From NCBI GenBank assembly GCA_965285935.1, contig OZ260661.1:137392001-137456000 (forward strand): 64,000 nt of DNA, in the 5' to 3' direction. The position numbers were made by a program, and so were the translations under genes. The notes beneath the pieces were generated by a model. That model saw only the letters and a list, made by a program, of their open reading frames with translations. It made no database searches and was not told where the DNA came from. Below, piece after piece: positions 37,301 through 63,541 of the stretch. Numbering within the stretch: position 1 is the first letter of the stretch; the number at the start of each line of letters is the position of its first letter. This DNA comes from Ophelia neglecta. Lineage: Eukaryota.

Positions 37301-40300
37301 TTTCCCAGAGTGTGCTTAATTCATACTACTTTCCCAGAGTGTGCTTAATTCATACTACTTGCCACTTGCAACATTGAGAAAATCATAGCTGTCTAGAAAG
37401 GCTGGTGACCCCCTAATGTTGTTTGTCTTAATGTTGCCTTTACCTATAGTGGACTAAAATTGGCAAAAGTATAAAAAATATCTTTCTGTTTTGACTTATG
37501 GCCCAGTCACAATGTCGGCGATCTGTCGGGGATTAGTTTTGGCCGGGGGTCGTCGTAGAAAATAAAGAATCCTTGAACAATCCTAGCAATAATCCTAATA
37601 AAAGTGGAGCAGTCACATTGTCTGAGATTTTTTCAAGGATTTTGACCCGGTTTTGTCGAAAAATCGTGGGATTAGCCTCCGATCGCCTCCGATGCAAATC
37701 GGAGGCGATCGGAGACGATATCTGCGAGCGTCTTTTCTTTTAATTTTTCCCCCACTACGGCGATTTACTACGATTCCACCGTACGATTTGTCGGAGACGA
37801 TCACAGAAAGCGTCGCAGGGCGCCTCCGATTCAGTCGGAGGGCGCCGGAGACTAGTCGCAGACATTTAATCTCAACCTAAATTTCCAATCCCACACAGAA
37901 TCTTGCGACTAGTCTCAGATTATTCGGAGGACGCCTCCGATTAATCGGAGGGCATCGCAGGTCATCGGAGATTGTGTCTGGGATACCCAACATGGGTGAA
38001 AAATCGTGCGAGCAATCTTCAAATTTTAAGTTCAAAGTTGGGGACCGCGACGGGTGTGGCGATGCCTAAAAAATCTGCGACAAGCCGCAGGCGTCCGGAG
38101 GGCGCCTCCGACGGGTGCAAAATCGTGAGATCTGTCTCAAGATTTTGTTAAAATTTCCCGGGTTTTACCCATCGCCGACGCATCGCAACTGATTTGTGAC
38201 TGGCCCATTATGAGTAGTTTTCTTGCGGTGTCACAAGCAAATCTGAGTGATTAGGCTTATTATTTCCTTGTATGGGCGACACGGAAGCAGCTGCACATAT
38301 TTTGGCCTTCTTACCCTCACTACTCACACCTTGTATTGATGGTGACCATGACCTTTTGTTGTTGTTGTTTTTTCAGTTGTAGGACGTGGGTACTTTTAAC
38401 AGGTGTCCTGTTGCTTGTACTCATATTAGCCCTTGGTCTTGGGCTCGGTCTGGGCTTAAGGGGCAAGGAAAGAGGTAAATATACCACGTGACCTAAACAA
38501 ACCAATTGATTATGACTGTCTTTTACTCTAATGTCAAATAAAAGTACTAAATGATATATTATATCCAGTGGCGGATTCAGCCCCCCCCCTTTTGTCAAAA
38601 AGTGGGCCTGGACCAGGGCCTATTTATGACCCCGGCAATGTGCATTCAGAGGGTTTGTAAGGGGACAATTGAGACATTTGCCTTGCCAATCTTGGAAAAT
38701 TTGGCCCCCCTTCCTGAAATCCTGGATCCGCCACTGATATGTTATTATATTTATGGTACATGTACATTTAATCATACTATTACAGATATTGATGGGATTG
38801 GAAATAAAGGAACAGGTTTATAAATAAAACTAAAATGTATCTATTTCCGTTTTTCAGCCACAAATACGACTCTTGGTAAGCAACTCTTGGTAAATTTCAA
38901 TAAAGAGAAACCAAATTGCATGATATTTTGTAGCGCAGATAATCATGAAATGCCGATATCGCGTTATGACTAGTTCCATTTCAATATTGTAGCACCTGTC
39001 CAGTGTCCAAACCTCGATTGTTTTTCTGGTAAATGTTTGAGCACGGGAGAAACCTGTGTACCACGTAAGTGAACACTTTATCATTTCGTAATCCGGACCC
39101 AGTTTCAACAAGAGGTATTAAGTTTAGGGATAAGATAAGCTTATTAACGATTAGCTGTTGCCGCGCTAATCGGTGTTTTCATTGGCCAGAATTAAGTTTA
39201 AGACCAAAATGGCTAGGGTTAAGACCAAATCCAGCTTACAAATCTCAGTTTATCAAGTTAAGACTGATTAAGCAGTTTAATCCTGAATTAAGTTCGATTT
39301 TTGACTTAAGACTGCTTCCTGAACGAGCCCTCAACGTCACATGATGCCACATGATGACCCATGCTTTGTTTAACAAATTGGTAAAGCCAGTCTGAGGTAT
39401 ACAGCACATAATTCTACATTATCATTGAACACCTACACTAGTACAGGTGTGAATATCCCCTGTCCTCTTAAAGAACCTACACCTGAGTTTATATCACTGT
39501 ACAGTAAGAAGCTACACATGATTTATAATCTAAAGAATGAGTCATACTGGCCGACTTCGGGCGATCTACGAGTTTAGAAGCCCAGGAGTTGCACCGGAAG
39601 TACTAAAATCCGATGTCACGTGACATGCTAATTGACGACGTTGGTAGCCTGCAGGTAATACTCACGTTGTATGTATGTAAACAAGAAAGCCCCCCCCCCC
39701 CCACCATCACCACCACCAACCCTCCCATTGCGTCACCAAAAACAAACCGAAAATAATATACCCATGTGATGCGGGTAAGCTGCAAATGTACCGCGTAAAC
39801 GTTTATACTAGTAAACCTGCCAAGGTAAGTGATCAGTCTCTTTATATTACTAGTCGAATAACTACTTCTTGTACGTGTGAACGGTTAAACATTCGGTAGA
39901 GGATGAAGTGTTGATTCAGTGCGCATGCCTCAAAATGAATTAGCATAAACTGGAGTAACTACTGCAGTTTTTCCGACGTCGGCCCCTGACGCTTACAATG
40001 TCTTAAGTGTAGCGAAACTCGTTTGTAGATACACTGCCCTAGATATGAAAGATGGATTTGCCCGTCCTGAAAAAACATCGTTTGTCACCAAATTATGATT
40101 TAATTGGACATTTTCCATTATTTTGTCAGTTGAGGGTGATTGCAAGACGGGTCAGGCGTGTGTTAATGGCGGTACATGTCAGTTAACATCTGGCAGCTAC
40201 AAGTGTGTGAATTGTAATCCCGGCTGGACAGGGGACTTCTGTGAAACAGGTATCACATTGAATGGCACACAAAACTGTTTGAAAGGCGACTTTCAGATGA

Positions 40301-43300
40301 ATATGTCTATATTCGATGCTTCAAGTCAGTCGTGTTGCAATATATATTGTCATATTAAGTATTTTGTTTATCGGAAGTGTTTCGCACATAAAATCAGTTA
40401 TTTTTTTTAGTTCAATATTCTTCACGAAAGAATAATGCTTGCGCAGGGAGCTATGCTTTTTTATCCATCCTATCTCCAGAACCAGAGCATAGGATATTGT
40501 CTAGATATCGATTAAAGAAGGCACAAAGAATACAATTAAATACATCTTGCAGGGTACAAGAGTTGCAGTCCTGAGACCTGTATCCAGGGTACTTGTGACG
40601 CCAGTGAGTCAGTCTGTCAGTGCAGCGCCGGCTACAAGGGCTATAGATGTGATGTTTGTACGTATTAATATACTTCCATTCATGCATTTTTTACCGACCA
40701 AACAAAATTAGGATGGCCAGAGACCTCATAGTTTCATATTTGCATAATTTTTAATTTATATTCGTACTTTCATAATTTAGGAGATAATGCACGAATTTTG
40801 TGGTTGATCAGAAGGATACAAAACAAGCCGAAGGCGTGTTTGTATCCCTGTGATTAACCGAGAAACTGGGCCCGGTTTCCAAAAGCGGTATAAGGTTTTT
40901 GGATTAAATTAATTATCGATTAGCTGAGACTGGGTTTATCAGTGTTTCCATTGACCAGGATTAAGTTTAAGAACGAAATGGTTAGGTTTAAGACCAAATC
41001 CAGTGTCTAGAAGCCTCAATTAGCACGCTAAGACCGATTAAGCACTTTAATCCTATGTTAAATCCGATTAAGAGGTAATACAGCTTCTAGAAAATGGGCC
41101 CTGGGCATTAACCCGTTTAAGCTCCTCGCCAACTACCGGTGCTTAAGGTCTATACTTACAGTGAGCAATAGGACCAGTCGGATATGTTTCATATTGCTGA
41201 CCAACAACCACTTTTCTTACCTCCAAAGCTGATTGCAATTAAAAGGCAGTGGTAAGGCTGGGATAAGTGGGGCTACTTTCAGCTGTTCATATGGGAATTT
41301 AACATGGGAATGATGTTTTAAAAGCCCTTACTTACCTTAAACAAAACTTTCAGGGATGATTAACATTTTAGAGGGCTTTCCATTCAGGTAAATTTCACAT
41401 TTGTGTGATAGCTACAGGTTTCGCAATGAACATGGAACCGCTGCAAGTCTGTAGTCTAGCCCCACATTCAAGTGCAGACTATTGGTATGCAGTGCTGTCA
41501 CCTCCTTGCTAGCAGGCTGAAATAGAATTATTACATCACTGACTGACTGCCCGACTGACCCTATTGCATCCATTATTTGAGTAGTACGATATATGGTCAA
41601 ATGCTTGATACTTTATCTATGAAGCATTTCGGGGTAGTGTTTTTTCATAGTGAATGCGCCGCTTTACGTATTTCTGTATGTTTTTGTTTTAGCAAGCGGC
41701 CAAGGCTGCGAGGCAGACCCATGTATGTTTGGTATATGCGTGCCCAGTGGCTCAGACTGGTCCTGCAACTGTTTCACGGGATACAGTGGACTGTACTGCC
41801 AAATACGTGAGTGTTGTTCTCCACAAGAGTGAATACCCTGCTGATGAGCAAATTTATTATTCAAGAATAGTCCATTAAGTTCGTTCCGAATAATTATGAA
41901 CCAGCAGCCACAGGCCCACATACAATACAGGGAAATATACAGTGAAACCTGTGAATTAAGACCACCCAAGGGATTGGAAAATGCTGGTCTGATTTCAGAG
42001 GCGGTGGGTTTAGAAATGTTGTTTAATATTGAAAGTATACAGTATGGTCCTCATATTAGTGGTCTGAATTGACATGTGGTCTGATTATAGAGGTGGTCTT
42101 TAAGGCAGGTTTCACTGTATTATTAAGTCGCAATAAAATTCCTTTTGTGGGTTACTATTTGTAACAACAAAAAGGAGAAATGGTGAAATACACGAGAATA
42201 TATGTACCCGCATAAGTACTACTCAGTATTATTTCGGCGTTAACGGATGAATTGGAACATGTACACATATTAATTTATAGTCTGAAAACTTGTAATAACT
42301 GTGCATAAATACTATCAGTTAGTAAAACAAATGAAGAAGTAAGTACCCGGTAAAAACATCAAGCATTAGTGAATAATAGCAAATCCCCAGGAACCACCTG
42401 CTTGGGAACACATATATCACATCCCAGTTCCCATTGGGAGCGAGAAATATTCTGCAGTTTTCCATGGTGCGAGTCAGAGCACAGAACAAAGGAGTCAGTT
42501 ATCACCGTAGGACAGAGAGGACATAGTGGCTAGGAGTGCCTATTGGTGTAGTCCAGGGGGACATCGATTCCTAGGAAGAAATGAAGCTATCGTTATAAAT
42601 TTCCCGCATCTGTGATAACTATATCTGTCCAAGTATGCATGGCGAGGGACTCGTTGTAGATGTAGTATAATTATCAATGCAATCAAATACTTATCAGTAT
42701 AAAGGAGACATTATTGTTTTGAGAACACTCTATTAGCAATTACAATTATACGGATATAAAATATCAGTATATTAAACCCTAGGAAGCTAGGTGTATGCCG
42801 TTCTTTTGCATCAGATATTTCCTTTGTTCACTTTAGTTATCCTTTATTTGTTTCTGTAGAGTCCATGTTTTATGCACGAAATATGGTATTATATGCGTCT
42901 GTATAAATGATGCGAATAAAACGCTCAATGACTATTTCAATGTTTTCAATGTTTCAAAACATTTTATTTTCAAGCTTCAAGCATCGAGTGCAACACCAAT
43001 CCGTGCCGGTATGGTTACTGCACAGCGGTAGGTACCGGGTACTCGTGTTCCTGCTACGGCGGTTGGACTGGGCTTAATTGCGAAATACGTGAGTTAAGTC
43101 AATATAACTTTCCTCTCCAAATGTGAAATCCTCATTGGGTACTGTAACTCGGTATTTCTTCCTAGTGAGTCGGTATTTTTTCATATATATAATGTTGTGA
43201 ATTTCATGCAGATGGAAAACAACATTTAAACAATATTTTCGGACTCTTTAACTTTCTCTGTGTATTATTTGTGGAAGCTGTTTGAATAGAAACATATTGT

Positions 43301-46300
43301 CTTGCTAAAATACCTTAGAATTGACATCGAGCCTCTATTTATTTTGTGCCTTCAATGGCACTTGAAGGTAAAAGTGATGAAAAATGTCCCTTGAATGTAG
43401 CCATAAAGAACGATGTTGATGACACAAGAAAATATAATTAATTTGTATTCAGGATTTGTGCCACTATATGTTTACCCTGTTTCAGCACACGGTAGCAACT
43501 GTGGATCCAACTATTGTGTGAACGGGGCCTGTGTCGACAAGGACCCAACAGGCTTCGAGTGTGTGTGTGACACGGGATACTCTGGAACCTACTGCGAGCT
43601 CAGTAAGCCAATATGAAATACATAAGCTTTTTTATGAAACCGAGGAAAAAAACATTTTCCCACCAAACAGAGAAAAAGCCTTTTTAATCGTCTGTTTAAT
43701 CTTCCGAATCATGAGGTGAATGGCCAAAAACATCATTTCCCATCTTCGTAGGTGAATTAGCCTGGAACGAATTTAACAATTACCAACCTAAGAATCAATA
43801 TCATTTGCAATGAGAATAAGTCATCAATTCTCCGCAATGAGAGTCTGGGCACAAAACAATCTAATAAGTGGAAAGAATAAAAACTAACCTGCAAATAAAA
43901 ATCATCCTAACGCCATTTTCAGATCACCCATTCGTACCATGCCAATTAGGCCCCCTTGCGCCAAAGGATCGCCTAATATACGCTGCTATTTATTCACAAA
44001 CGACTTTGTTCCGCACCACTGTACCATTTGGCTAATCTAGCCCCAAATCAAATCGGCGGTGGTTAAAAATTATCTCATGCTCGGCAGTCAAAATGATATT
44101 ATAGTTATGAAGCAAGTAATTAGAATTTGTGTTAATAATCTTGGGCACATGCAAAAACATAAAGATAGAATACAGTTAAAACTGGTGATTTTATTTTGTT
44201 TCATGCCGTTGCATTCCGTTTCTTAACTCATCTAAAATAACTTTCAATCTTGCCGAATAAGTCACATCATTATTGTACCTCTTACTCTAAATACGCAACG
44301 TAGAATCATTCCATTGCACATGAATATTATCTATTAGAAAGCAAGAATAAACTATTCGTCTGTCTCTTCTCTCTTGTACAAGTCTTATAAAAAGTCGAAA
44401 AACGAAAACACTGTGCACCGCTAATCTTCTGCTTACTGCAATTTATTCATATTACGTTTAATAAAGAAACTAATTATATTCTTCGACACAAATAGCCACG
44501 ACCGATGGATGCGAAGGAAACCTCTGTCAGCAGGGTACATGCGTACCTAGCACGGATGGTTTCACTTGCGAATGTGAGCCAGGATTTGAAGGCAACTTTT
44601 GTGAAACACGTAAATATATACTTTCAATTGGGTTCTTATGTGAATCTGTTGTGTCTTTGTATTCTGAGTATTGTTGAATGAAGTTTAAGATAAAACTTCT
44701 GTCTTGATAACAAGTTTAGCATATAGTGCCATGTTTAGCTCAATTTTTTAAGGGTCATCGGTTGGACTAGTTTCCAGTAGGCCAATAGAATATATCGTCT
44801 ATTTTTAACAGTTCATGCGAATTAGAGACAGCTGTTTTACGTTCAAACCCTTGGGTATGATGTGTAACTAACTTATTAACAAAGGCTTATATTTGTAATT
44901 TTAGCCATAAACACCGACTGTGACAGCAACCCGTGTGCGTCCGGGACTTGCATGCAGCAGACCTGGGGATACCTGTGTCAATGTCCGGTTGGGTTCCATG
45001 GGCAAAACTGTGAAATTAGTAAGTTACATGCAAAAGGATTTCAGTAGAGATAACTACACAGCTTAGCTCTTTGGAAGACAACATCCAAAATTATTGTACA
45101 TCCATCGTTTGTTATAAATGTTATGTTCAAGGAATGCAAAATCATTTAAGAACATCATAAACTTTGACATTCCAAATGGGGTTTTATTCGGATAATAATA
45201 TTTCTTTTTTTTTTATTCTAGAGACAGACCCATGCGTAGGGAACACGTGTGTTGTAGGTCAGGGAACGTGTGTTGCGGTCGGCACAGCGTACACATGTAA
45301 TTGTTTGGCAGGCTTCAGTGGCACTAACTGTGAAAATAGTGAGTAAAGCCTGTTCCGTTTGACTTCTGTCGGCCTTATGCGCTTAAGCAAGGCTGTATTC
45401 TAAAATGCATGTTAACTTGCGCGTACAAAGGAAACCCTTACAAGATCAAGTGCTTTTCCGGCGATACGGTAGTGAAAGATTAAAAAAGGATGAAAAACAG
45501 CACTTGCCCGTTATGTTGCAAGCTGAACGCCTCCATTAGTTTTATACTTTTACGTTATATATTCCCGAAAAAGGATATATTGCGGGCATGCTTGCAACCT
45601 GATTTGCAGCATTATTGAACAAAAGGAATATATTTAATGCTGACGACAAACAAATTGGTTTCCTTAGTTAATCAGAATAGAATTTTAATTGAGGGCATGT
45701 ACTCGTTCTGTGTGTACCTAAATATATGGCCACCATAAGTAATCATTGGAATAGGAAGAGAATATGTTTACTTGATTAATATATAAGTACGTAAACACTA
45801 TAGTTGGGTATCCTCATTTTTTTTATAGTTGTTGATCCTTGCCTTGGTAATCAATGCACTACCGGCCAAGGGACTTGTACGCCTGCCGGAAGCACATATG
45901 ACTGCACCTGCAGCCCTGGATTCAGTGGGACCTACTGTGAAGTCGGTAAGTTGAATAAGAGGCACCACTTGTGATTAACAGAAACACTGCCTGTTCATGT
46001 GATTTGAGTAATACCACTTGGCAACGCCTGTATTATGCGTTGCATGGCTTACATTTTCTATGCACTTTCAAATTTCGTAGAATAGCGAGAAATGTGAAAC
46101 AAAAACTACAAATCAAGTATACTTTATTATGAATGATGTATCTTACCCCATATTTCATGTTTCCAGTTGACGACCCCTGCATGTTGTCGCAGTGTATTGA
46201 TGGCCAGGGTCTATGCGTTGCATCGGGTATGGCTTACTACTGTTCTTGCAATATAGGATTCACAGGACCATTCTGCGATGTAGTTGGTAGGTTGTGAACA

Positions 46301-48105
46301 TTATTGTATCTAAACAATTCACCTGTAGCTGAGCGATTCAACCACCAACACAGTTATTCCTATTTTTATTGGTTCACATTAACATACTATTAAGGACTAA
46401 TAACTATCTATGTATCAGTTGTTTGGTGAAACAATTAATTAATATTTCAGATTGCTTGATTAAACAAATCGCTTTTCTCAAATTAAATGATTATGAAAAG
46501 CAACTATATTTTGAAAGCGAACTTAGTAAACTTTCTTTTTGGTAACGGTGGATTTAATAACTAGTCCCTATAGGATAGCAACTAAATATATATGATCTAT
46601 TGTACAACGCAAATAAGCGTCTTGGACATTTCTGAAGAGAATGAAGCAAAATAACTACAGAACGGTTAGGATTCGGTTTCAGTTTACCTTTAGGATGAGA
46701 GATTTGGTTAGGCGTGGCCCAGTCTAGCACCCTATTCTTATGAAGTTTTATGTTCATAAATAAGTTTATAACATAAGGTATATAATAGAGTACAAAACAA
46801 AACAATACTATGTATTGCCTCGGTAGCTTTTAATTGAAAAGGCCATATCCACGGCGTTTAAAATTGGGATGCTCGCTGATTATGCAAGGTTTAGTAAAAT
46901 GGGCCCTTGAGAAACCTTCAACCAGGCTGCAAACTTAACCGTTGATCATAGTATCAAATGTTTAACCTATACTTCACCCAAATATACATGTACCAGCGTA
47001 GCCTCTTAGCGCTCTAATCATTTATATGCTTATGTACTTCAAAGCCCCGTGTTCCGGAGTCACATGTTCCAACGCAGGTACATGCAGTGAGGTCACTGGC
47101 TCGTACCAATGTACATGTAACCTGGGCTACAGCGGAGTCGACTGCGAAATAGGTATACAATTATCAAACCACCCAGATATACTATTATTATTATAAACTT
47201 TTCTTCTTCTTTCTTCTCTCTAATCACTACAAGTACCTAAGTTTGAGAATAAGTGTGTTACTCTCTCTGCTTTGTTTTGGTATTTGCACTGCCCATAATT
47301 GTTTTTCTAGTGTGATCTGGAACTTTCTGTTGTCCTGCTCCCTTTGCCATGTTTATTTTATATGTTTGTATTTACTGTATTATATAGTGTACTCGGGTGT
47401 ATTACTATGCCAATAAACACTTTCGAATATACAATAACCGAAAGTATGCGGAAGCATGGAACACGTTTTAAGAGATCATCGCTGTATATTATGAAATAAC
47501 TTTATATGCTGTCTCTTACACACGCATGAATGCATGTAATATTTCACATTTTTGCAGACCCTTGTTCCGGCATTGACTGTTCTAACAAAGGGACTTGTAG
47601 CGTACTTGGCAGTGGCTATATGTGTACCTGTGATTCCGGCTATAGTGGAATAAACTGCCAAATAGGTAAGGACTAGATAATTAAAAATCAACAATTTGTG
47701 CAGTTTTGAAACAAGTGAACAACTAACAAATATACTAAATCCGTCCGATTTCACACAAAAAAACTAAATTGCAGACCCACATTACATGACTCATCAGTGT
47801 CATGCACGTTCATTCGTTTGCTACCAAATATGATAGAATAAACACTTAAATATTTTGCCATCACTTAGCATAAGAAGTGATTTAAACTTTTTTAGTATGT
47901 AAGTCAAATGCACCATTCGTTAGTGTAGGCCAGTTACTGATGTTACGAGAAAACACTTAGAAAAAAAACGCATATTCTTTTTTTCTATTGGAACATTGCT
48001 TTATTATATTCTTTTAAAATTTATACAAAATTTAAAATGGAAAGCAGTGCCAAAGCCTCTCATCGATGTGTATACAATCGCTCTCGTTGTCTTTCAGCAC
48101 CATAA
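34339..48105 (+). CDS. Gene B: type II transmembrane protein with Tyr-rich cytoplasmic tail and 12 EGF-like modules, no lectin domain found (~605 aa)
   Basis: Exons: 34339-34541 (ATG, Tyr-rich), 36535-36645, 38377-38474 ([34 protein letters not shown]), 38786-38815 (weak donor), EGF exons 40130-40249, 40553-40657, 41693-41806, 42975-43088, 43486-43602, 44496-44609, 44905-45018, 45222-45338, 45829-45945, 46167-46286, 47045-47152, 47558-47665, and a putative last exon 48098-48105 (ctttcag|CA CCA TAA). The frame is open throughout; the terminal exon is less certain. Confidence 0.85.
35270..35517. mobile_element. Family 3 poly-G MITE
   Basis: CAGTGGCGTATTCAGG...CCTGGATACGCCACTG; internal sequence is shared with the 38566 copy. 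Confidence 0.82.
35623..36480 (+). repeat. ~335-bp tandem duplication in gene B intron 1; the second copy is interrupted by a MITE
   Basis: TTTCAGCCGGAATAAACACAT...CAATGTGC(G/A)TCTCATT at 35623-35958 and 35962-36480. Confidence 0.92.
36092..36289. mobile_element. Family 3 poly-G MITE with TGTCT target-site duplication
   Basis: TGTCT|CAGGGGCGGATCCAGG...CCTGGATACGCGCCTG|TGTCT; the empty site is present in the duplicated copy at ~35766-35781. Confidence 0.85.
36845..37025. mobile_element. Family 1 MITE
   Basis: CAGTGAAACCTGTG...AAGTTTCACTGTA. Confidence 0.85.
37277..37360 (+). repeat. 29-bp perfect tandem repeat, ~3 copies
   Basis: CAGAGTGTGCTTAATTCATACTACTTTCC repeated. Confidence 0.92.
37500..38206. 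mobile_element. ~700-bp CpG-rich non-autonomous DNA transposon (PIF/Harbinger-like termini)
   Basis: TIR GGCCCAGTCACAA / TTGTGACTGGCCC; many internal CGCCTCCGA / TCGGAG(G)GCG inverted motifs; no transposase. Confidence 0.75.
38377..38474 (+). CDS. Gene B transmembrane (signal-anchor) exon
   Basis: 98-nt phase 2 to 1 exon, the same length and phases as the gene A TM exon. It has a hydrophobic run ending LGLGLGLGL and a strong polypyrimidine acceptor. Confidence 0.87.
38566..38736. mobile_element. Family 3 MITE
   Basis: CAGTGGCGGATTCAG...CTGGATCCGCCACTG, flanks ATATC / ATATG. Confidence 0.82.
39095..39330. mobile_element. Family 2 MITE
   Basis: GGACCCAGTTTC...CTTAAGACTGCTTCCTGAACGAGCCC; internal TTAAGACCAAATCCAG. 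Confidence 0.7.
40868..41101. mobile_element. Family 2 MITE
   Basis: GGGCCCGGTTTCCAAAAGC...GCTTCTAGAAAATGGGCCC; internal TTAAGACCAAATCCAG. Confidence 0.75.
41938..42119. mobile_element. Family 1 MITE
   Basis: TACAGTGAAACCTG...CAGGTTTCACTGTA. Confidence 0.88.
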
Positions 48106-48819
48106 TATACGTCAATTGTAGTGTACTATAATTGAAGCTTCATACATTACCAAATGTATGCTAACGCCAATGGAAGAAAGATAGACAGTTCGCTGGATAA
48201 CATCTTACAATATCAGACAGAGGTGCAGAACGTTTGGGTGCCGAAGAAAATCTCATCGGAGTGCATAAATATATTCAAAGGTGTCTCACCTTTACAGCTT
48301 GTTAATTCATAATCAAACATGTGTCAAAGTCACCCACAACTGAAAAGACTTTAATTGTTTTGTAACGGTATTTTATAATCCCGCATTGTGAACCATGAAA
48401 TGTTTGTTGGCATGATCTGTTTTGTGGATTGAATTTTTACATATATATCTTAAACGTGTAAATCGGTTTTCTGAGTAAGGACAGAGAGCGATTCCTAAAA
48501 AGAAGTCTCACATTAGACATTTTCCGCGGCATAACATTGTACGGCATTTTTTTTTAAATTTATAGCATACATTAAATAATTTCAAGAATAAAGTAGGATT
48601 ATATTGCTACTAATGACTTGTATATAATAAATTTATGATCGTTTGCATATAAATTTTTGTTCAGTTTTGAATTCATAAGCTCCCTTAAAGTAATTATTTT
48701 ATTGTAAAAATGATTGACATATTGATAATCATATTGTGCGTAACAAACACGTTAATTCAAGGTATCAAGTCAGTATTTACCGTGGCACGCTTTATTCCAG
48801 ACTTGACTAGGGCGTTAAC

Positions 48820-49058
48820 CTTTATTGTAGAATGATTTACCCCAGACTGGGGTGTTTTATCGTAGAATACTTTTCTGCAGACTGGAGGGTTTGTCGTTGA
48901 ATTCGTTACTCCGGAACGGGCAGTTTATCGTGAATGGTTTACTGAAGACTGGGGCTGTTGATAGTCGATGCTTAACATTAGATCGAGGGTTTATCGTAGA
49001 ATACTTTACTCCAGACTGGGACGTTTATCTTCGAATGCTTTACTCCAGACTGGGGTGC
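48820..49058 (+). repeat. ~35-bp degenerate minisatellite, ~7 copies
   Basis: Consensus approximately TTTATCGTAGAATACTTTACTCCAGACTGGGGXG. Confidence 0.85.
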
Positions 49059-49496
49059 ATTTGGCAATAGATTTAAAAATCATGTAAAACAATAAAACGC
49101 GAAATTAATGACATCTGCCAAATTCGCTTATAATTCCAGCCCACATATACGATTGGCCTACGTGCCCACATTTTCCATAGGACCCCGGTCCACAATACAG
49201 CTCGTAGACGAAATGATACGTCGAAAAGTAAGGGCTGAAATATGACTCCCGAAATTAAACTTCAGACAAAACTTGCTTGGTTTACAGTATAGGCACGCAT
49301 TACTGGAGCACCAGGGACAACGTTGATGCTACATACTGATGGTGCTCCTGGGTGAAGAAGCCTCATTACATAAATAAATTAGTGAATATATAAATCGAAA
49401 CAAGGAATACTTCAATATCAATAAATATAGAAATAGCGTTATAGTGGCTTATATATGGTATATGTATGTTTAATGAAATGCATGCACCATATCTAT

Positions 49497-53159: not shown

Positions 53160-56100
53160 CTGGAAGAATATTGAAGCCACTTTACGCGGTTAATACCCTG
53201 CTCAATCTTTATGTGAGTCAATGGGCATCCACGAGAACACATGTCTTTATTATCTTGTAACCGATCTTTTCTAATAGTGCTATTATCGTTATTTTCTAGT
53301 CATAGTCATAGTCATAGAACCCTCGGCTACGCCTCGGGCGCTATGACCATGGCGGGCTGCTAATAATTTATGTCGGGCCACTGATATAGCGTAACGCCCT
53401 GCAAAATCATGTTTTTGGTATATTAGTTCTTAATGATTTCGGACAGATGTAATGGACAATTCTTGAATAATTATTCGGTATTGTCGACCGGGTATCTATT
53501 CCTTGTTTTTAACAGTTAACTTTGAAGTTAATGTTATTTGTATACATAAGTTTTAGACTAACAAAGCAACACATTGTTTTGTTTTTCGAAACACTAAGTA
53601 ATATCTAGTATTTACGTAGGATATACAATCGTCATACAAGATAATGACTTGGTGAAGGGTTTGGTTTGGTTCGGAATATAATAATGGGATAGTTTAAGGA
53701 ACAAGACTGACTGGTAATTATGCATTATGCTACAGAAGTCTTTATAATAGCAGCTTCTTGAGTAAGCTCCTGATTAATGAGTACTTACTTGGAAATTGGC
53801 AGTCCTGCCCGTTGTATCCAGCGTCACAATTACAGACATAGTCACATCCCGCTGCCTGGCAGGTTCCATGCGTGCTACAAAGTACACTGACACACGGCTG
53901 GCAAACTGTCAATATAGTTACAATATTACCCTGAATGATTTGTTTCACCTAAGGTTTTGGCACATGTAAGGAGTTAATCGTTCCCCATGCACTGCCTAAT
54001 ATATTTCTTCTAAAGATTTACTTCATGCCAGATAAAATTTAAAAATACGAATATAAAATTAAGGCCTGCTCTTCATTTTTACGAGCTTTGTGTAGTCCAA
54101 TCAACGCGAAAAGGAATGAATAATAATTTTATCCACCTTTGGCTTATGTAGGCGCTTTTCACTAATGGTATTGATATACTTCGGTCCATTAATATATACA
54201 TATATACATATATATACATATATATCGATATTCGACCATAATCATTATGCGTTACTATTGTGCAACTATGTGTATAATAAATTAATGATGATATAATTCC
54301 TATGTGTGCATTTTTTGATATTGGCAAAATTATCTGCATGTATTCGAAAAAACCTTTGGACGTGTGTTGAACAGTTATCATCGTCTTGGTACAAAATACT
54401 ATTTGAAATAACAATGAATGTGACGTTTGATGGAATCATGTGTCTGCATGACCACATATACTTAAAACATATCTTACCTGTAAACTGGCAGTCACTCCCG
54501 TAAAAGCCGGCATTACATTTGCAAGTATACTGGCAGTCAACGGGCTCACAAGTGCCCTCGTTATTGCACAGCACACCGTTACACGGTTCGCAGGCTGAAG
54601 CAGAATGACAAATTATGTAATAGCAATCACTAAGCTTTGTCAGTAAGTCTTATGTATGTACCTGGCGTTAAGTGCACGTGATTTTTCTGAGGGCCTCGCT
54701 ATAGAAATGGCTTATGATTTAAATGATTTATTTCGAATATAACAAAAATTCAGTCAATTTAAAATTAACATTGCAACATTAATAATAAATTAGTGTATAT
54801 CAAGTCTATCACTGTGTGATTGTTGGTTGGGTGGTGATGGAGGAGGAAATGGGTGCGCGTGGGCACAATCATTTGTTTAGTTATCACGGTATGTCACACT
54901 GCTAATTCCTGGGTTTTCTCATATAGGTAGCGTATTATACCCAGTCGTACGATTTAATCAACAGTCTCTAATAATTCAGCTTCTTTATGTATATTATGCT
55001 TCTATGGTATCTAAAACACAAACATTCTCTTATTGTGCTAACCATTGCTGCAGATGAAAGATCAGAAAATTGTTGCGTCAGGTTTTAAAATTGTACCTAG
55101 TTGGCAGTCATCTCCTATGTAGCCTATGAAACATGTGCAAACGTAGTTTGTCGGGCCATCGGGAGAGCAGGTACCGTGATTTGAGCAGGTCACGCCTTCA
55201 CAGGGATCTAAACGAGATAGACGATGCAACAATTAATAAACTTTCCTTAAAATGAGACATAGAGTATTCTTGGAACATTTTATGCTATATTTTTATTCTT
55301 CTGCTAATATAAATTTGATACTGGTATGTTGAACAAAAATATAGTTTGAAAGTATAAGTCCCTTATAAAAGACCCACCCACACTTTTTTTTTTAACTAGA
55401 ATAAGACAATTTTTACATCTTTTTGACTGTTGTTGACGCATAAAACCAGCCGTTTGAAATATCCCTAACTAGTTTTGTGTTTCTTTTATAATCATTGTTA
55501 CAAAACCTACTTGGAGGATCAGGAGTTTGGCAGTCTGTGCCTTGAAATCCTTCATTGCATATACACTTGTAGGTTGTCCCGGCAAGCTGACAGGTCCCTT
55601 GACCAGAGCAGGTCACCTCGAAACATTCATCTGGAAATACAAAACAATCTAAATTCAAACCTCAAGAACATGCGGATTAATATCTGTGCTTAAGCTTCTA
55701 AAAAGGAATGCGCACGTCTAGATACACTCAATATTATTTTCATTTAAGCGTGTACATTCACTTAATATGATTTTAATAAAATTTTATTTTATTAATTACA
55801 TTACAAGCCTTTTCACACATTCTGACCCAAAATTGCAAAAAAAGTTTTTTTAACCTTTTTCACAATCATCTCCGGAGAAGGGGACATCGCAGACACACTG
55901 GTATGTCAAACCCATAGCATTACAGACGCCTCTGCTAGAACATAACACACCAAGGCAAGGATCTGGAATATAATTGCACGTCTTAATGTAACTTAAAGTG
56001 TTATTGCGTAACACCCCCCGCCCCACTCACCTCCCATCTCCCATCATCATAACCGCTTTACTATTGACTTCATTAATAGTACATATGTGTGCGAGTATGC

Positions 56101-57889
56101 GCGCAGAAAAAGTTTTCTTTTTCTTTATTGTTCTTCCGATGATCAGGCGCCAAAAACATATTTTACATAACAAATATACAGATATGTATGCATACGGTGA
56201 TCATTCTTAAAGCAAATATATTATACACTACACAACATTGCTATTATCAAAGGAACTCACCGAAATTTTCACAATATCTTCCACTGTAACCTAGATCGCA
56301 AGCACAGAAGTAGGTTTCCCCAGCTGGCACACATGTGCTCTGGCCTTCAACACACTGGTTACCGACACATGTATCTTTTGCTACAAAGAAAGAAATACAC
56401 AAGTTTTTAAACCAGTATACTTACGCATTTTATGTGGATAATCGTGAACATTTTCTGTAATCATTTTTCCGACATAGCTCTTTTTTATAGGATAATCCCT
56501 GTCGAAAATTCTTGAATGACGACATATCATGTCGATTATATATCTTAAAAAGAAATCGTAGAATGTTCCTTCTTGTTAGCATTTGTTGGTTTTAATTCGT
56601 TACAACTAATTCACAAGTGATATTGAACCTTTAAAGGTTTGTAAGCTTATATTATTTAAGCACCTTAAAACTGTGTTGTTATTACCATTTTGGCAGAATT
56701 CGCCTTCATATCCTGGGATACAGGTACATGTGTATGAGGTTCCCACAGGTACACAGGTCCCCTTGTTTATCACACATTGATTCCCGTCACAGGGGTCGGG
56801 GACTGTAGGGCGAATGAGCAAAAGAGCATGCATACTAACAGTTAGAACGATTTTAATATAATCAGATCGGCACAAGTAAGTGAATTTCAACTTTTATCAT
56901 TTTTATTCTGAATTCTAACCAAAACATCATTCATTGTACAAGTTATAGGGTAGGAACATATAGGCTAGAGACATCTTGTATGTGAGTGGGTGGGGGGGGG
57001 GGCAGTCTTTGAAATAATATTATGTACAAGGACGATTTGGTCATTGTGTTAAAATATAAAACAAGAGAAAGCAATATGCTTTTACCCGAGAGCAAAACAC
57101 TATTTTTGTGTTGCCTAAGCGACAATACTATTTTCTTTGGGGGGGGGGGGGGAGTAAAAAATACATAGCCTTCGTTCACCCGTCACTCCCCCCCCCCCCC
57201 CCCCCCGCCTCTTCCCAAATCCCATCACACAACCAAAACAAATGTCTGATTCATTTTAAAGCGTTACACACAGAAACAAAGATTAAACTGACCGACACCA
57301 ATTTATGCCTTTTTATTGGTGGTAAAACATTTTAATTTACTTTCCATTATAAAGCATACATCAATCGACATAACAGCAGGGCAATCTGACATATAAATTA
57401 GCGGTACCTGTTTCACAGTTTGTCCCGGCAAACCCAGGCAAACATTGACAAACGTAACCGGTTGGAGATGCCACACATATCCCTTGGTTCGCTATACACG
57501 TGTTCTCGAAACACGGATCGGAACCTACAAAAAAACAATCAGTTGATCAGTTAATCAATCGAATTTTATTAAAGTTCACTTGACTATATCGCACGCAGAG
57601 TATCCCGACCCCCAGTCAGCCCTTGTGATTGTGGGATGGATGTATAGGCAGAGAGCGTCTGCTGACACAATCTCTCTGATCTCATTAAGATTCTGTATTC
57701 CCACTACAGTAGTATTGAAAAAGTATAGCATATTGTAATAATATAACTTATCTATGTGGTGTCCTGTATTAGGCATATTATACTGATATGACTTGTCACC
57801 TACTCTTGTTAATATTAATTGTTGTATATAGGGACATGCGAGTATGCAGGCGAGAGGGGGATATGTACATTGGAGCGGGTGTGATGTGC

Positions 57890-57920
<31 letters not shown>

Positions 57921-60900
57921 TGAGTGTTAAATATATGTATGTATATGTGTGTATATGTGAGTATATATGTCTATGCATGCCTTGCTCTCCAGAAAGTGGA
58001 GGATAATAAAACAATAATAATGATAAAGTCATTTCTGAATTGAAAAATGTACTATAGTGTCACTTAGATAATCGTAAAGAATTTTGATATATAATTTACT
58101 TAAAACAATCTATACAATTTAGCACCATATTTGGGGTCAATGGGTTGAAATTATACACGGGCACGGATAGCTGAACAAGATTCAATCAGAATCGTCACTA
58201 ACGCAACCAGCCATTTAATGAGTGCCTTTTTGCCAAGTATATTCAAGTATATATAGTCATAGTCAGAGTCATATAAGATATTCAGAATGTGATTTCGTAT
58301 TTTAAATACAAAATCTCCCAGATGTGAATCAAGCAATCCAGAGAAGCGCAACACGTGGAGCTCATCCCTTACACTTTTTATACAACGGTGACAAAGTCTA
58401 CATTCAGGAGGATTGCGTGGGCGAATATAACGGCCAGTCTCAATTTCCAGCTGTCGGCCCCCGAGTCTAAATTGAGCCACAGCGAGCCGATTACTAAACT
58501 TAATATGTAAATGTTTTCAAGATTGAAAGATTTTTTTGTAAAGGTAATAGCTGCGTAACAGAGTTAGAATATTTCGGGAATATTTCGAAATACTCGAGAA
58601 GCTTTAAAGCAAATCCATATTACGGAGATGTTCGGTACGATAATTATCAGCTGGGACATAGGTATTTTTGGAATTTTGCTCTTTAATTTCGCGCAGAAGG
58701 CAATCTTATTTTGGTGCATAAAGTAGGCCTATTACGCGCACACAATCATAAGTAATTTTGTTCATAGTTAAATTCGTTGTAAGGGGTAGCCTTAATTGGC
58801 TCAAGTTGTGTCAGAAAAATGCCAAGTACTCCACGAAATTAAACTATGTGCGAAATTTCGTCTTTTTTGCAAAGAAAATCAATCACTACATATATATTTA
58901 AAGCTGAACGATCGTGACGCAAACATACGCTAAATGGATTCTGAGAAATTGACTTGAAAAGAACTTTTGATTCACCATATAAAAAGTCTTAATTGTCTTA
59001 AGATGGATACCTTATATATAGCCCGGCAGATAAGTGAATATTTTTGGGAGAATCTTTCAAATGATGATACAAGCACCATATTTGGTCCAGATACACATCT
59101 GGGACTACTTTTTCAAAAAAGCCCGTTAGCCACCTGAAAAATCAAAATGGCGGCCATTTTGGATTTTCATTTTTGTTAACAATTTGTCAATTCCACTTCA
59201 ACATGGCTCAAAGTATATATTTTGAAATAAAAAACATACAAATAGGACAATTATACCACATAATATTCAGATAATAGTAATTTTGTTATGAAATTGGCAG
59301 CCATCTTGGAAAATAGCAGCCATTTTGAATTTTTGAGTGGCTAACGGCTTTTTTCATAAAAACAACCTCGAGAGAGTGCACATACCAAATTTGGTGCTCG
59401 TATCACTATTTGAAAGATTATATAGCTTATCTGCCGGGCTAATAGTAGTCAATGTATTGGAAAGAAAATTAGAGGACTTCGATGACTACCCATGTTCTTA
59501 GCGGTGTGTCGGATACCTGAATAGTTTATACCCATCCCAATTCTTAATCGATATTGCCTGATTTGTTCAACCTTAATCAGGTTCGAAGGGATTTTACATT
59601 GCAGTATTTGCCACTGGATCGGCCAAAGGGCCGTTATTGGTGACGTTGTGCCTCAAACACGTTAGAGTATAATCCCATACCAAAAACATGAGTGGATACA
59701 CGGTAGACACAGAAAAACCATTTATCAAGAATGCTCCGATGAATCGGTTCGAAATCAATTTAAGTTTTCAATTATGTTAGTTATATAGGTTTATGCACTG
59801 TTTGGAAGCAGCGGGTGAATTTAATTATGTATGTGGGCCGGAGATTTGTGGTTCCATGGTGAATTCGGGCAAATTTAAAGAACTATTTTGATTGGTGATT
59901 TGACTTGCTTTCAGGGGATCCTCTCCCGTTTTTTTTAACATATTGCCTACTTACTCATCTCACAGTTCTGCCCGTAGTAGTTTGCCGGACATTCACAACG
60001 GTATCCCCAGGTCTTCTCGAAGCAAGTTCCTTTTAAACAGGGGCTGCTTTCGCATGCATTGTTCAAAGCTGAAAATATCAATCAAAATTGTGAATGTAGG
60101 AACTATCAATTATTACATGACACAGTATTGTTGACTATGGTAATTTTCTACATCATTGAATATTGATAGTTTTAGCCAAATACGAAATTGGCACCATGTG
60201 AAATTGTTGTTATAAATAGTGAATGCTTATGTCTAATGATTTTAGGTCAAATAAATAATGTGACTTACGGGTCTCACAGTATGTCCCTTCGAAGCCTATG
60301 TGACAGGTACAGGTAAACCCGTTTGGGGTGTCAGTACAGTCTCCCTGCTGACACAGATTGTCCGCACACGTCAGAATGATTGCTTAAAGCAAATGATATC
60401 ATATTAAATTGGAACCTGTGAATTAAGACCATCCGAAGGTGTGGAAAATATTATTCTGGTCATTAGTTAAGACAGGTCATTCCATTACGTTGAAAGTGTA
60501 CAATATGGTCTTCTTGTTAGTGATCTGAATTCAACTGGTGGTCTAAATCTAGCTATTTTCTTTAAGGGGAAAAATTTAAAAACTGTGAGTAATATTATAT
60601 TCAATCCCTCGTTCGTTTCAAACCTACACACGGAGGCTAGACTTATAAATAACAAATAATAAATAGTGTGAAACAAAATGGCATCAGTGCTTTGTTGCAG
60701 AGTTAAATTCAGTGAAATGAATGTTTAACATATCACAACATATCTGGATAAACTCGCGAAAGTTGTGTGTCTGAACAGTCATGACCAATGTATCACACAT
60801 TGGCTTTCAAAAGCCACAACACACAATAATAATAGCTTACGTAATTCACAGTACGTTCCAGTGAAACCGTCAAAGCAAGAACAGGAGAAGCCTGTACCGG

Positions 60901-63541
60901 CTGTAACACAATTTCCATTCTCACAGGTTGTGGCGGTACAGCCGCTATTATCGGCTGCAATTTACAAAGTGGGGTAAGAAATGTATGTCATCCTATCTTC
61001 CTGTTAGAAACATTTATATTAGACAATTCTTTTAATAATGTGGTACAAATTACTAAGATATCCGAAAGAAACAATTGATGGAGAGTTCATGAAATAGATT
61101 AAAAATGTGTACGCCTCAGCCTTCAGTTATACGCCTTACCATTCGGTTATACGCCTCAAGTTAAGAAATGGGTCTGGTAAACGGTGGTAATTCATCGCAG
61201 TTCTTATATTGTTTACACATTACATCCTATAATACTCGACAGGTTAAAACATTGTTGATTTTTCTTACGTATTTCGCATTGGGAACCTGTCCAATCCGGG
61301 TAGCAGGTACACGAGTGGCCTGTCCCCACTGCTGTGCAGTAGCCGTTCTCACAGGGATTAATACGACAGTCAATATACGGGGCTAGGTGGGAAATCAGCC
61401 ATTACTTGATACTTGAACATTAAAAAGATTGATCTCACCATTGTTCAAAAAAGGCCATTTAGTAATGTACGCCCCAAACCAAATAGTTTGATTATACGTA
61501 GGTTGGCGTCCTTTGTAAAACATGCATTCCAAGAATAGTTAATATTTGCTTCCTTACGTTTTTAATTCAAAGGTTAATATTGGACAGCTGAAAGAAAAGC
61601 AGGAATGTTTGATTTGTTGATTTTCAAAACGTACGTATTTGACAATAAGGCCCGGAATAGGACGGGTAACAGTCACATGTCCAGTCTGCCCCGGTGCCAA
61701 CACATCTCCCGTACTGACAGGCGTCAAGCTGACAGGGTTGGCCGACGGCTACACAACACAAGTGTTTTAATCCATGATCGTTTATATACCAACAATATAA
61801 CAACAATATGCAGTATTTATTAAATATAAATTTTTCAACTGAATGTATAAATACTGTTATTGATAGCAGTGAACAGTGTCCATTTCAATGAAGAGCTTTT
61901 CAATAGGGAACAGCATTTAAATGCCCATACATCGAGCTTATACTGGTATCTACTAGTCTGCAGGTAATTGCCTTTGTCACCTAATGCAGACAGTAGGTGG
62001 ACAAATTGGTGGAGTCTGCTCTTTGAGAATACACGGACAATGTGTAAAATAGCTCTGTTCAGATTGAAAAGGTAGCATATTTGTCTGATATTACATGTAC
62101 AATTTAGGACCTACTAATCATTTCAGAATATATGATAATTTATTGTGAATTTCATGACATCATATGATATGGACAGTGTATACACAACACAATTCTTGAC
62201 CAGCAACGCCAAAAAAGTTCGCCATAGCAATAGTATTTTGTGGTTAGTAAAATATTCTATAGCAGTTCACTGCCAATTAATAATGACTTTAACTGTATGA
62301 TAGTGGTACTAGAAAATACATACGTATGTTACATTTGTATCCTCGATAGCCTGTGTCGCATTGACACATGGACATACTACTGTCACACACCCCGTTGATA
62401 CAATGGTTCTCATCACAACTCTGCCAGCCTATTTAAATAGAATGTACATCAACTTGAATGAAGTGTTGATTATTTAACAAAAACTTAAGGCTCGATAAAG
62501 GCTGGTTGATACGATATTTGTTTAGCTCAAGTACTACATGGGAGTCGTTTTCAGATGAAAACTATCGATATTTGTTTTCATTCGTGGATTACAAGATCAT
62601 TCATTGCAGGTAGATGTGTATTGGGCTGCGACTGGCATTTCTGATAATTTCGGACGGACTATTAACTTCTAGGTTAATTATTTAGCATTGTCCGGCGGGT
62701 ACCTACACCCGTTGTTTGTCCATAGTAGTAGTGATGTTAAAAGGCGATCATTGACTGAATATATCCTACACCCCAAAACTGTATTATAAAAGTATAATCA
62801 TAATCTATGTCTAGAAATAATTAGCAGTAGGGAACTTAATCTATGCCTGAAGTTAGCAATAAAGGACAGTTCTGGGGCCTTTATTTCTTTTCCCGTCATA
62901 GCGAAAAAGTACTTCGTGTCTTATATTTCCGCATTAAGCAGTTCTTTTCGGAAAAATACGAATCTTCCTTCTACACAAACATACTTAGAAAAAGGGCAGA
63001 CTACTTCTGCACCACTTGTTTTTGCAAACCTGGTTGTTTCAACTTAAGACAGGTTAAACTGGATTCACTTTAACAACCGATATATGATATATTATACACT
63101 GTCACCGATCACTAGAAATGGCATCTGCTGAAATTGAGTCATTTAAGAAGTCAATCAATATAATCGAAAGGTTAACGCAACACACAGCTAGATAGGGACA
63201 TTTAAACCACTGGTAATACGCATCACCAGTAACAGTTGCCCCCCCCCCCCCCCCCAGCCCACAAAAGAAAAAGAAATCTAAAAAATGTCATTCCAGTTAT
63301 ACCAAAGACAGTGGGTGTTTAATATGGGACTTATACATTCAGACTTAATACCGATTTATTGGAAACATGTTGTTTTACAGCAAACGTTTTGTGTCTAAGT
63401 CGCCTCTTGTCGAAAGCTTCTTACCTAATTCGCAGAAGTCACCAGTCCAGCCTGGAAAGCAGTCCACACACTTGTACACGCCTGAAACACTCTGGCAATC
63501 GCCGCCATTTAAACATTGTTCACCTGTATTACAAGAGCCGC
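51657..63541 (-). CDS. Gene C (5' part outside window): 15 EGF-like modules followed by a C-terminal jacalin-like domain
   Basis: Exons in transcript order: 63425-63541, 62324-62428, 61635-61748, 61269-61382, 60841-60954, 60269-60382, 59955-60068, 57408-57524, 56686-56802, 56261-56380, 55855-55962, 55511-55630, 55097-55207, 54478-54594, 53789-53905, then lectin exons 53009-53159, 52575-52752, 51657-51809 (TAA). All GT-AG with an open frame. TM exons are presumed to lie beyond 64000 by paralogy. Confidence 0.9.
52098..52320. mobile_element. Family 2 MITE
   Basis: GGTCTGGTTTCTGGAAG...CTTAAGACCTCTTCCAGAAACCGGGCCC. Confidence 0.65.
58020..58562 (-). mobile_element. 3' fragment of a non-LTR retrotransposon ORF2 (C-terminal Cys-His region) inside a gene C intron
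   Basis: 'LRSYYLYK..' then 'AQFRLGGRQLEIETGRYIRPRNPPECRLCHRC..RDELHVL', typical of the LINE ORF2 C-terminus; disrupted by a stop. Confidence 0.8.
59019..59441. mobile_element. Palindromic non-autonomous DNA transposon with TAG..CTA termini and 3-bp TSD (Academ-like)
   Basis: ATA|TAGCCCGGCAGATAAG...CTTATCTGCCGGGCTA|ATA. Long imperfect arms include AGCACCATATTTGG/CCAAATTTGGTGCT, CCGTTAGCCAC/GTGGCTAACGG and AAAATGGC/GCCATTTT. Confidence 0.82.
60411..60550. mobile_element. Family 1 MITE, partial
   Basis: GAACCTGTGAATTAAGACCA...TTAGTGATCTGAATT...GGTGGTCT; right TIR is missing. Confidence 0.7.

What the first reader, a model, noticed from the sequence alone, without database searches (positions are those of the whole stretch)
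40130..63541. Genes B and C are an inverted, exon-by-exon collinear pair; one appears headless, the other carries the lectin
EGF exon sizes run 120,105,114,114,117,114,114,117,117,120,108,108 in B and 117,105,114,114,114,114,114,117,117,120,108,120 (+111,117,117) in C, with module-specific matches. EGF1 [16 protein letters not shown] vs [16 protein letters not shown]; EGF4 GYCTAVGTG in both; EGF6 NLCQQG in both; EGF7 TWGY.C.CP in both. I see no obvious intron similarity, so the duplication looks old, yet both frames are intact. B then appears to stop (AP*) with no jacalin exons on the plus strand before 51.6 kb. Inference: a paired arrangement, with a ligand-binding member and a headless Tyr-tailed co-receptor or decoy that could heterodimerise through matched stalks.
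Basis: partly seen in the sequence, partly recalled or inferred. Interest (0 to 1): 0.75.

Follow-up and report, generated by a model that had tools for sequence, protein, structure and literature searches.

The report
Lectin-less paralog in EGF-jacalin receptor cluster
Two neighbouring, oppositely oriented genes of a marine invertebrate are old copies of one membrane protein with a long EGF stalk, and one copy has kept the stalk intact but has no sugar-binding head; this looks like ordinary gene-family evolution, and a partner or decoy role is untested.

Summary
The description is largely right. Gene B (+) and gene C (-) converge tail to tail.

- **Shared order.** Same-rank matching holds for EGF1-8 (50-67% identity) but not for ranks 9-12.
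- **Age.** Introns do not align and synonymous sites are saturated, so the duplication is old.
- **B is intact.** It has 72 of 72 cysteines, GT-AG at all 12 EGF exons, and no faster protein change than C.
- **B has no head.** The 4-kb gap to C, the A-B spacer and the wider cluster hold no spare jacalin or neck-EGF exon. Every good acceptor in the gap that lies clear of C's last exon adds at most 15 residues. "AP*" is only one of several equal candidates.

The "pair" reading is weakened because the locus is a seven-gene cluster (L, A, B, C, D, E, F). Six genes carry jacalin exons and only B lacks them. Matched stalks follow from common descent. No unpaired stalk cysteine or charged TM residue points to dimerisation.

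No RNA run exists, so expression and the true 3' end of B are unknown. My reading: a selectively maintained, lectin-less paralog made by a partial inverted duplication or a 3' loss. The scan had already noted this cluster and B's tyrosine tail.

The parts
34339..34541 (+). Gene B exon with the start codon and the Tyr-rich cytoplasmic tail (68 codons, phase-2 donor)
Evidence: Open frame from the ATG and a GTAAGC donor.
38377..38474 (+). Gene B transmembrane exon (phase 2 in, phase 1 out) with the LGLGLGLGL motif
   Evidence: Similar TM exons were found in A, C, D, E and F.
40130..47665 (+). Gene B EGF exons 1-12: 40130-40249, 40553-40657, 41693-41806, 42975-43088, 43486-43602, 44496-44609, 44905-45018, 45222-45338, 45829-45945, 46167-46286, 47045-47152, 47558-47665
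   Evidence: Splice sites and phases. 6 Cys and G[FYW]xGxxC in 12 of 12 exons. Pfam EGF over cut-off for B1 and B12, and 20.7 bits against a 21.5 cut-off for B8.
47666..51656 (.). Spacer between the last EGF donor of B and the stop codon of C. It holds no lectin or EGF remnant. Candidate short terminal exons of B start at 48098 (AP*), 48298 (AC*) and 48566 (AYIK*). Two dispersed repeats lie at about 49486-49682 and 50138-50512.
   Evidence: (no remnant), (acceptors), (no Pfam family in the 6 longest + strand open frames), (repeats), (contigs tile it colinearly).
51657..53159 (-). Gene C jacalin-type head in three exons: J1 53159-53009, J2 52752-52575, J3 51809-51657 including the stop
   Evidence: Pfam Jacalin on J2 alone gives 17.0 bits against a 22 cut-off. 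The J2 profile retrieves Jacalin proteins. D, E and F have 47-69% identical exons.
53789..63541 (-). Gene C EGF exons 1-15: 63541-63425, 62428-62324, 61748-61635, 61382-61269, 60954-60841, 60382-60269, 60068-59955, 57524-57408, 56802-56686, 56380-56261, 55962-55855, 55630-55511, 55207-55097, 54594-54478, 53905-53789. The last two are 8-Cys neck modules. C's TM and tail exons lie outside the window, at L001:1670-1576 and about L001:2953-2873.

Best explanation
B is a lectin-less member of a seven-gene cluster. The cluster encodes type II membrane proteins built as a short cytoplasmic tail, a TM helix with an LGLGLGLGL motif, a rod of single-exon EGF modules, two 8-Cys neck modules and a three-exon jacalin-type head.

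B and C are sister copies from an old inverted duplication. B either never received, or later lost, the distal stalk, neck and head exons.

Shown: the gene structures, the B-C sister relation for the 5' two thirds, the absence of head exons, the intactness of B, and a rate of protein change equal to C's.

Inferred: B is still a working gene. It would put a 12-EGF rod with no sugar-binding head on the cell surface and end a few residues after EGF12.

Most likely mode of action (weakly supported, about 1 in 4): B joins or competes in complexes of its headed relatives through the family-wide glycine-rich TM motif and membrane-proximal modules. It would then modulate them through its expanded Tyr-rich tail or by dilution. 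A special fit of 'matched stalks' is not needed.
For: - Structure and phases are coherent from the ATG to EGF12.
- B's best non-self match in the cluster lies in C for 8 of 12 modules, and C's lies in B for 9 of 15.
- Nucleotide similarity survives only in 4 exon pairs and introns are not colinear.
- Over 368 pooled codons pS is 0.805 (saturated) and pN is 0.289.
- B keeps 72 of 72 Cys, 12 of 12 G[FYW]xGxxC motifs and GT-AG at all 12 EGF exons.
- With F as outgroup there are 15 B-unique and 23 C-unique changes in 221 sites, chi2 1.68.
- No head or neck remnant exists in the gap, in the A-B spacer or on the + strand of the extended region.
- C's J exons are 47-69% identical to those of D, E and F, so a B head of that age would be detected.
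- A genome-wide J3 search finds only cluster members, 5 of 5 hits.
- Six TM exons share the Gly-Leu motif.
- DNA contigs tile the gap colinearly.
Against: - There is no RNA evidence at all. Expression, the 3' end and the polyadenylation site of B are unknown.
- dS is saturated, so no branch-specific dN/dS can be given. Recent inactivation would leave no trace.
- The relative-rate test rests on six module triplets, and orthology is uncertain for three of them.
- B's last donor (47665) is a good splice site with no verified partner exon.
- No ortholog from another species could be examined. The exon-wise search found no close relative in the protein library.
- The TM-motif interaction is inferred from recalled knowledge of GxxxG motifs and was not tested.
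Confidence: 0.6

Rival explanations
1. One reading: B and C form a dedicated two-gene unit. The headless, Tyr-tailed B would heterodimerise with lectin-bearing C through module-by-module matched EGF stalks, acting as a co-receptor or decoy.
For: - B and C are each other's closest relatives over EGF1-8 and share tail and TM exon structure.
- B has a longer Tyr-rich tail (68 codons) than C (27 codons).
- Both carry the same TM motif.
Against: - There are seven paralogs, not a pair, and B is the only headless one.
- The other convergent couple, L and A, are both headed.
- Matching fades after module 8.
- Every EGF exon has an even Cys count, so nothing suggests a teneurin-style covalent stalk link.
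- The TM helices have no charged residue for adaptor pairing.
- No expression data exist.
Confidence: 0.08
2. B is a dead or dying relic: a truncated duplicate that lost its 3' exons and is no longer expressed or useful. It would look intact only because the inactivation is recent.
For: - B lacks the domain that defines the family, which is present in 6 of 7 members.
- There is no verified terminal exon after a still-good donor.
- No RNA run holds it.
- Earlier notes on other clusters of this genome report many broken copies (unchecked).
Against: - There is no stop or frameshift in 14 exons, all splice sites are canonical, and 72 of 72 Cys are kept, despite divergence so old that synonymous sites are saturated.
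- B has not changed faster than C.
- There is no trace of decayed head exons, so the loss is not recent.
Confidence: 0.2
3. B is not headless. It would have further 3' exons that were missed: a non-homologous domain, very distant exons, or exons absent from this assembly or haplotype.
For: - The donor after EGF12 is strong (GTAAGG) and in the family's usual phase 1.
- The exon-wise searches cannot see a novel fold made of short exons.
Against: - The 6 longest + strand open frames of the gap have no Pfam family.
- The best acceptors clear of C's last exon give at most 15 residues. Two others give 38 (51645, 12 bases from C's stop codon) and 53 (50267).
- There is no + strand jacalin match from 47.7 kb to 143 kb.
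- Contigs from three runs of one sample tile the gap without a break.
Confidence: 0.1

Closest known systems
Animal jacalin-related lectins (ZG16p/ZG16b; PPL3 of the pearl oyster Pteria penguin)
   Same: C and five cluster relatives end in a jacalin-type domain. The J2 exon profile retrieves Pfam Jacalin proteins. Passages of PMC8878817 name these proteins as the known metazoan jacalin-fold lectins.
   Different: Those proteins are small and secreted. Here the domain tops a type II membrane anchor and a 12-15 module EGF rod. None of the 10 retrieved relatives that I tested has EGF. B has no such domain at all.
Teneurins (type II membrane proteins with extracellular EGF-like repeats that form cis dimers)
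   Same: Type II topology with EGF-like modules next to the membrane. Weak Pfam EGF_Teneurin matches appear alongside generic EGF. The architecture comes from the abstract of PMC6428715, and cis-heterodimers from the title of PMC9670113 (search listing).
   Different: No teneurin C-terminal domains are present. As I recall it, teneurin dimerisation uses EGF repeats with an odd cysteine count, whereas all 27 EGF exons here have 6 or 8.
Vertebrate type II lectin-like receptor clusters with truncated members and adaptor chains (NK gene complex, DAP12/FcR-gamma pairing).
   Same: A tandem, birth-and-death cluster of type II lectin-headed membrane proteins in which members differ in tail length and completeness.
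   Different: The lectin fold and the stalk are different. Adaptor pairing there needs a charged TM residue, which is absent here. Paired receptors keep the ligand-binding domain, which B lacks.

Membership tests
EGF-like domain (Pfam PF00008 / PF07974) | Six cysteines in the C-x-C...G-aromatic-x-G-x-x-C pattern, and a profile match over the cut-off | tested here: met
   6 Cys and the motif in 12 of 12 B exons. Pfam EGF gives 24.3 bits (B1) and 30.0 bits (B12) against a 21.5 cut-off. B8 gives 20.7, just under. C14 gives EGF_2 23.5 against 22.1. 4 of 27 exons were scanned.
Jacalin-like lectin domain (PF01419), head of gene C | Profile match over the gathering score | tested here: inconclusive
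   Exon by exon only. C J2 gives 17.0 bits and A J2 gives 19.4 bits against a 22 cut-off, both on profile positions 34-89. J1 and J3 give no match. The three exons were not joined, by rule.
Jacalin-like lectin domain (PF01419), head of gene C | Nearest relatives in sequence space are jacalin-domain proteins | tested here: met
   A J2 profile of 5 cluster exons gave 26 library hits at E<=0.001, best 1.3e-14. 9 of the 10 I scanned are Pfam Jacalin at E 4e-6 to 7e-223.
Jacalin-like lectin domain (PF01419), head of gene C | Beta-prism I fold and sugar-binding loop residues | not tested
   This needs the joined three-exon domain for a fold prediction. That step was left out.
Jacalin-headed family member (gene B) | Jacalin-type exons downstream of the EGF stalk | tested here: not met
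   None in 47666-51656 on either strand (19.6 bits at best, reached by 13 of 30 shuffles). None in 15801-34300. None on the + strand up to +143 kb.
Teneurin-type covalent EGF dimer | EGF module with an odd number of cysteines (recalled criterion) | tested here: not met
   B has 6 in each of 12 exons. C has 6 in 13 exons and 8 in 2. No junction codon is Cys.
Adaptor-coupled receptor pair (DAP12-like) | Charged residue inside the TM helix (recalled criterion) | tested here: not met
   The TM exon peptides of B and C show no D, E, K or R within the hydrophobic span.
Pseudogene | Stops, frameshifts, lost splice sites or an accelerated protein rate | tested here: not met
   None in the tail, TM and 12 EGF exons. 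15 B-unique against 23 C-unique changes. Lack of expression could not be tested.

The most novel reading that the evidence does not exclude
B is the signalling or regulatory subunit of the cluster's lectin receptors. It would be a headless chain whose expanded, evenly spaced tyrosine tail is brought to the short-tailed, jacalin-headed paralogs (C and perhaps D-F) through the shared glycine-zipper-like [11 protein letters not shown] motif. That would be an invertebrate counterpart of adaptor-coupled lectin receptors, born from the receptor gene itself.
Probability: 0.12. Interest if true: 0.6.

Novelty: new variant of a known kind. Interest (0 to 1): 0.3.

Why it matters
If B is expressed, it shows how a lectin-receptor family can produce a ligand-blind member from its own stalk. 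Such a member could be an in-family regulator, decoy or signalling partner. It would also give a handle on an apparently undescribed receptor architecture: a type II anchor, an EGF rod and a jacalin head. If B is silent, it is an ordinary truncated duplicate. In both cases the locus is a seven-gene birth-and-death cluster, which is common in invertebrate genomes, so the general interest is modest until RNA or protein data exist.

Tried and rejected
- **Jacalin over the whole genome.** The Pfam Jacalin search listed 36 other loci but missed the window's own exon-split heads, so it could not test B. I replaced it with local exon-wise tblastn.
- **RNA evidence.** The one run search found only three DNA runs of one sample. 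Read laying could therefore only check the assembly.
- **dN/dS.** Synonymous sites are saturated. I used a relative-rate count instead.
- **Inversion-split scenario.** If an inversion had split B, an orphan head should lie on the far side of B. Nothing above noise was found in 15801-34300.
- **Second family locus on contig C9.** It holds only two EGF exons and no TM or jacalin match. I rejected it as a member.
- **Protein-library search.** The J2 profile gave no close ortholog and no EGF-jacalin architecture among the 10 of 26 hits that I scanned. The other 16 hits were not scanned.
- **Literature.** Two full-text searches listed no paper on an EGF-stalk/jacalin type II protein. I read only passages of PMC8878817 and otherwise saw search listings and abstract starts. 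I asked for no supplements. Lectin repertoire tables in supplements could name such proteins.
- **Not attempted.** Fold prediction, multimer modelling and full-length homology searches all need a joined spliced model.
Full report
**What is there.** The window is G000:C1:137392001-137456000 of a 762-Mb eukaryotic assembly. It has no N.

A six-frame scan for the EGF cysteine pattern shows three blocks: 6.6-14 kb (-), 40.5-47.7 kb (+) and 55.1-62.4 kb (-). Extending each core to the nearest in-phase AG and GT gives phase-1, single-EGF exons. For B their sizes are 120,105,114,114,117,114,114,117,117,120,108,108. For C they are 117,105,114,114,114,114,114,117,117,120,108,120,111,117,117. All 27 exons have AG/GT.

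B also has a start-codon exon with a Tyr-rich tail (34339-34541, phase-2 donor) and a TM exon (38377-38474). The phases run coherently into EGF1. C has the same layout just outside the window: a tail exon at about L001:2953-2873 (27 codons) and a TM exon at L001:1670-1576. Both are therefore type II membrane proteins, and they are transcribed towards each other.

**The head of C.** After two 8-Cys neck modules, C continues with three exons: 53159-53009, 52752-52575 and 51809-51657.

Scanned one exon at a time, only the middle exon touches Pfam Jacalin. It gives 17.0 bits against a cut-off of 22, on profile positions 47-89. Gene A's middle exon gives 19.4 bits.

As a second test I aligned the middle exons of five cluster genes and searched 1.84 billion representative proteins. 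That gave 26 hits at E<=0.001, the best at 1.3e-14. Of the 10 I scanned, 9 are strong Pfam Jacalin proteins and none has EGF. The head is therefore jacalin-like by sequence. Its fold and its sugar binding were not tested.

**Collinearity.**
- In the B x C identity matrix the same-rank module is the best match for B1-B8: 67, 50, 54, 65, 50, 54, 54 and 61%. That is 8 of 8 by identity and 7 of 8 by score.
- None of B9-B12 has its best match at the same rank. B9 matches C10 best. B11 and B12 both match C13 best and are 60% identical to each other.
- By a simple calculation of mine, seven same-rank best matches among 15 choices would arise by chance at roughly 1e-7.
- Against the whole extended cluster, B's best non-self match lies in C for 8 of 12 modules and C's lies in B for 9 of 15. 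The distal CSG-type modules of both genes match gene F at least as well.
- At the DNA level only B1/C1, B4/C4, B7/C7 and B11/C13 align. The four intron matches are not colinear, and three of them fall on a high-copy repeat in C's last intron.
- Over 368 pooled codons pS is 0.805, which is saturated, and pN is 0.289.

**Is B really headless?**
- I ran 21 exon peptides (six jacalin exons of A and C, and 15 EGF exons of C) against both strands of 47666-51656 with very loose settings. The best match is 19.6 bits, and 13 of 30 shuffled gaps reach that.
- The positive control works. The heads of A and C find each other at E 1e-4 to 1e-7. C's head exons find D, E and F at 47-69% identity.
- The six longest + strand open frames of the gap have no Pfam family.
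- No + strand match to C's head exists up to 143 kb on the window scale.
- No orphan head lies between A and B: 20.4 bits at best, against 19.2-22.7 in 10 shuffles.
- The gap holds two short dispersed repeats and is otherwise unique.
- Contigs from three DNA runs of one sample tile 46900-52899 colinearly. This is not independent of the assembly.

**Where B ends is unknown.**
- Read-through of the donor at 47665 gives GKD and then a stop.
The training range is 3.7-14.9 bits.
- 48298 (AC, then stop) and 48566 (AYIK, then stop) score higher.
- The well-scoring sites add 2-15 residues, with two exceptions. One adds 38 and lies next to C's last exon. The other adds 53.

**Is B alive?**
- Each of its 12 EGF exons has six cysteines and the G-aromatic-x-G-x-x-C motif. 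C has that motif in 11 of 15 exons.
- With F as outgroup, over six module triplets and 221 sites, 15 changes are unique to B and 23 to C (chi2 1.68). The orthology of three of these triplets is uncertain.
- A copy that had drifted since a duplication this old would not keep 14 open exons. This is inference.
- No RNA run holds the stretch. Expression is therefore untested, and a recent inactivation cannot be excluded.

**Context changes the reading.**
- A genome-wide search with C's last head exon found five matches, all on this contig within 66 kb to the right of C.
- Fetching the flanks and mapping EGF, TM and head exons shows seven genes:

| Gene | Strand | Jacalin-type exons |
|---|---|---|
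| L | + | yes |
| A | - | yes |
| B | + | none |
| C | - | yes |
| D | - | yes |
| E | - | yes |
| F | - | yes |

- TM exons with a Gly-Leu repeat were found in A, B, C, D, E and F.
- B is the single headless member, and orientation does not go with headlessness, because L is + and headed.
- No EGF exon has an odd cysteine count and no junction codon is Cys. The TM helices carry no charged residue. Two known signatures of stalk or TM pairing are therefore absent. Both criteria are recalled, not read here.
- The shared LGLGLGLGL stretch contains GxxxG spacings. As I recall, such spacings can drive helix association. That is the only feature that could support hetero-oligomers, and it is family-wide, not specific to B and C.

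**Verdict.** B is an old, inverted, partial copy of a C-like gene, or a copy that lost its 3' third. It has been maintained as an intact type II, 12-EGF membrane protein without a lectin. The co-receptor or decoy idea remains possible but unsupported, and 'matched stalks' are what common descent predicts.

**Literature and earlier notes.** Two full-text searches listed no paper on this architecture. Passages of PMC8878817 name ZG16 proteins and oyster PPL3 as the known metazoan jacalin-fold lectins. Earlier notes of this scan had already flagged the cluster (s1-745669) and B's tail (s1-745711).

Noticed in passing
G000:C1:137372001-137535000 (window scale -20 kb to +143 kb; loci L001-L010): The family is a seven-gene cluster. 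L (+) lies left of the window. D, E and F (-) lie right of it, with TM exons at about 91.9, 106.8 and 127.9 kb and jacalin-type exons at about 83.6-85.2, 100.7-101.9 and 117.8-118.6 kb on the window scale. No further EGF modules were seen from -40 to -16 kb or from 127 to 163 kb.
   Followed up: partly
L006:1860-2687 and L006:4753-5648: Gene F has two copies of its head exons about 2.9 kb apart. The J2 and J3 peptides are identical in both copies, and the second J1 match covers only the last 21 residues. The same locus holds a 100-N run. This is either a very recent local duplication or an assembly effect. The N run was left untouched.
   Followed up: no
window 38411-38452; L001:1577-1648; window 15677-15748; window scale 91800-91886, 106705-106788, 127800-127886: All six TM exons found end in a Gly-Leu repeat (LGLGLGLGL, weaker in A) at the outer end of the helix. 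This is a conserved, possibly helix-packing motif.
   Followed up: partly
window 49486-49682 and 50138-50512; also 52100-52499: These are short dispersed repeats. The first has dozens of roughly 80% identical copies among the 40 scored candidates, out of 2605 first-look candidates, and a very high word depth in the DNA runs. Another high-copy element sits in C's last intron.
   Followed up: partly
window 48800-49070: By eye, a run of imperfect repeats of roughly 60 bases (the '...ccagactgg...tttatcgtagaata...' units) lies in the B-C spacer. The tandem-repeat tool was not run.
   Followed up: no
window 52632, 52694, 52703: Run X2's contig differs from the window at three places inside C's middle head exon. 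No difference was listed inside B's last two EGF exons (47045-47152, 47558-47665). All three runs come from one sample, so these are probably allelic.
   Followed up: no
window about 997-2420 (+): Long open frames here look like a reverse-transcriptase-bearing retroelement between gene L and gene A. This is judged by eye from the translation and was not searched.
   Followed up: no
C J1/J3 (window 53148-53150 region and 51660-51662), and the same places in D, E, F: The heads carry one Cys near the start of the first head exon and one as the last or second-last residue. That could be a disulfide tying the two ends of the domain together.
   Followed up: no
L004 about 2118 (window scale 95118, - strand): A short ATG-initiated frame (MIDHYSNPYGHSHGHYR...) resembles C's 27-codon His/Tyr tail. 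It may be gene D's first coding exon. B's 68-codon tail would then be an expanded version of a family-wide short tail.
   Followed up: no
G000:C9:22764045-22765760 (L016/L017): An EGF1-like exon here is 51-55% identical to B1 and C1 and has one more EGF exon beside it. There is no TM or jacalin match within 40 kb. It is a different gene that shares only this module type.
   Followed up: yes
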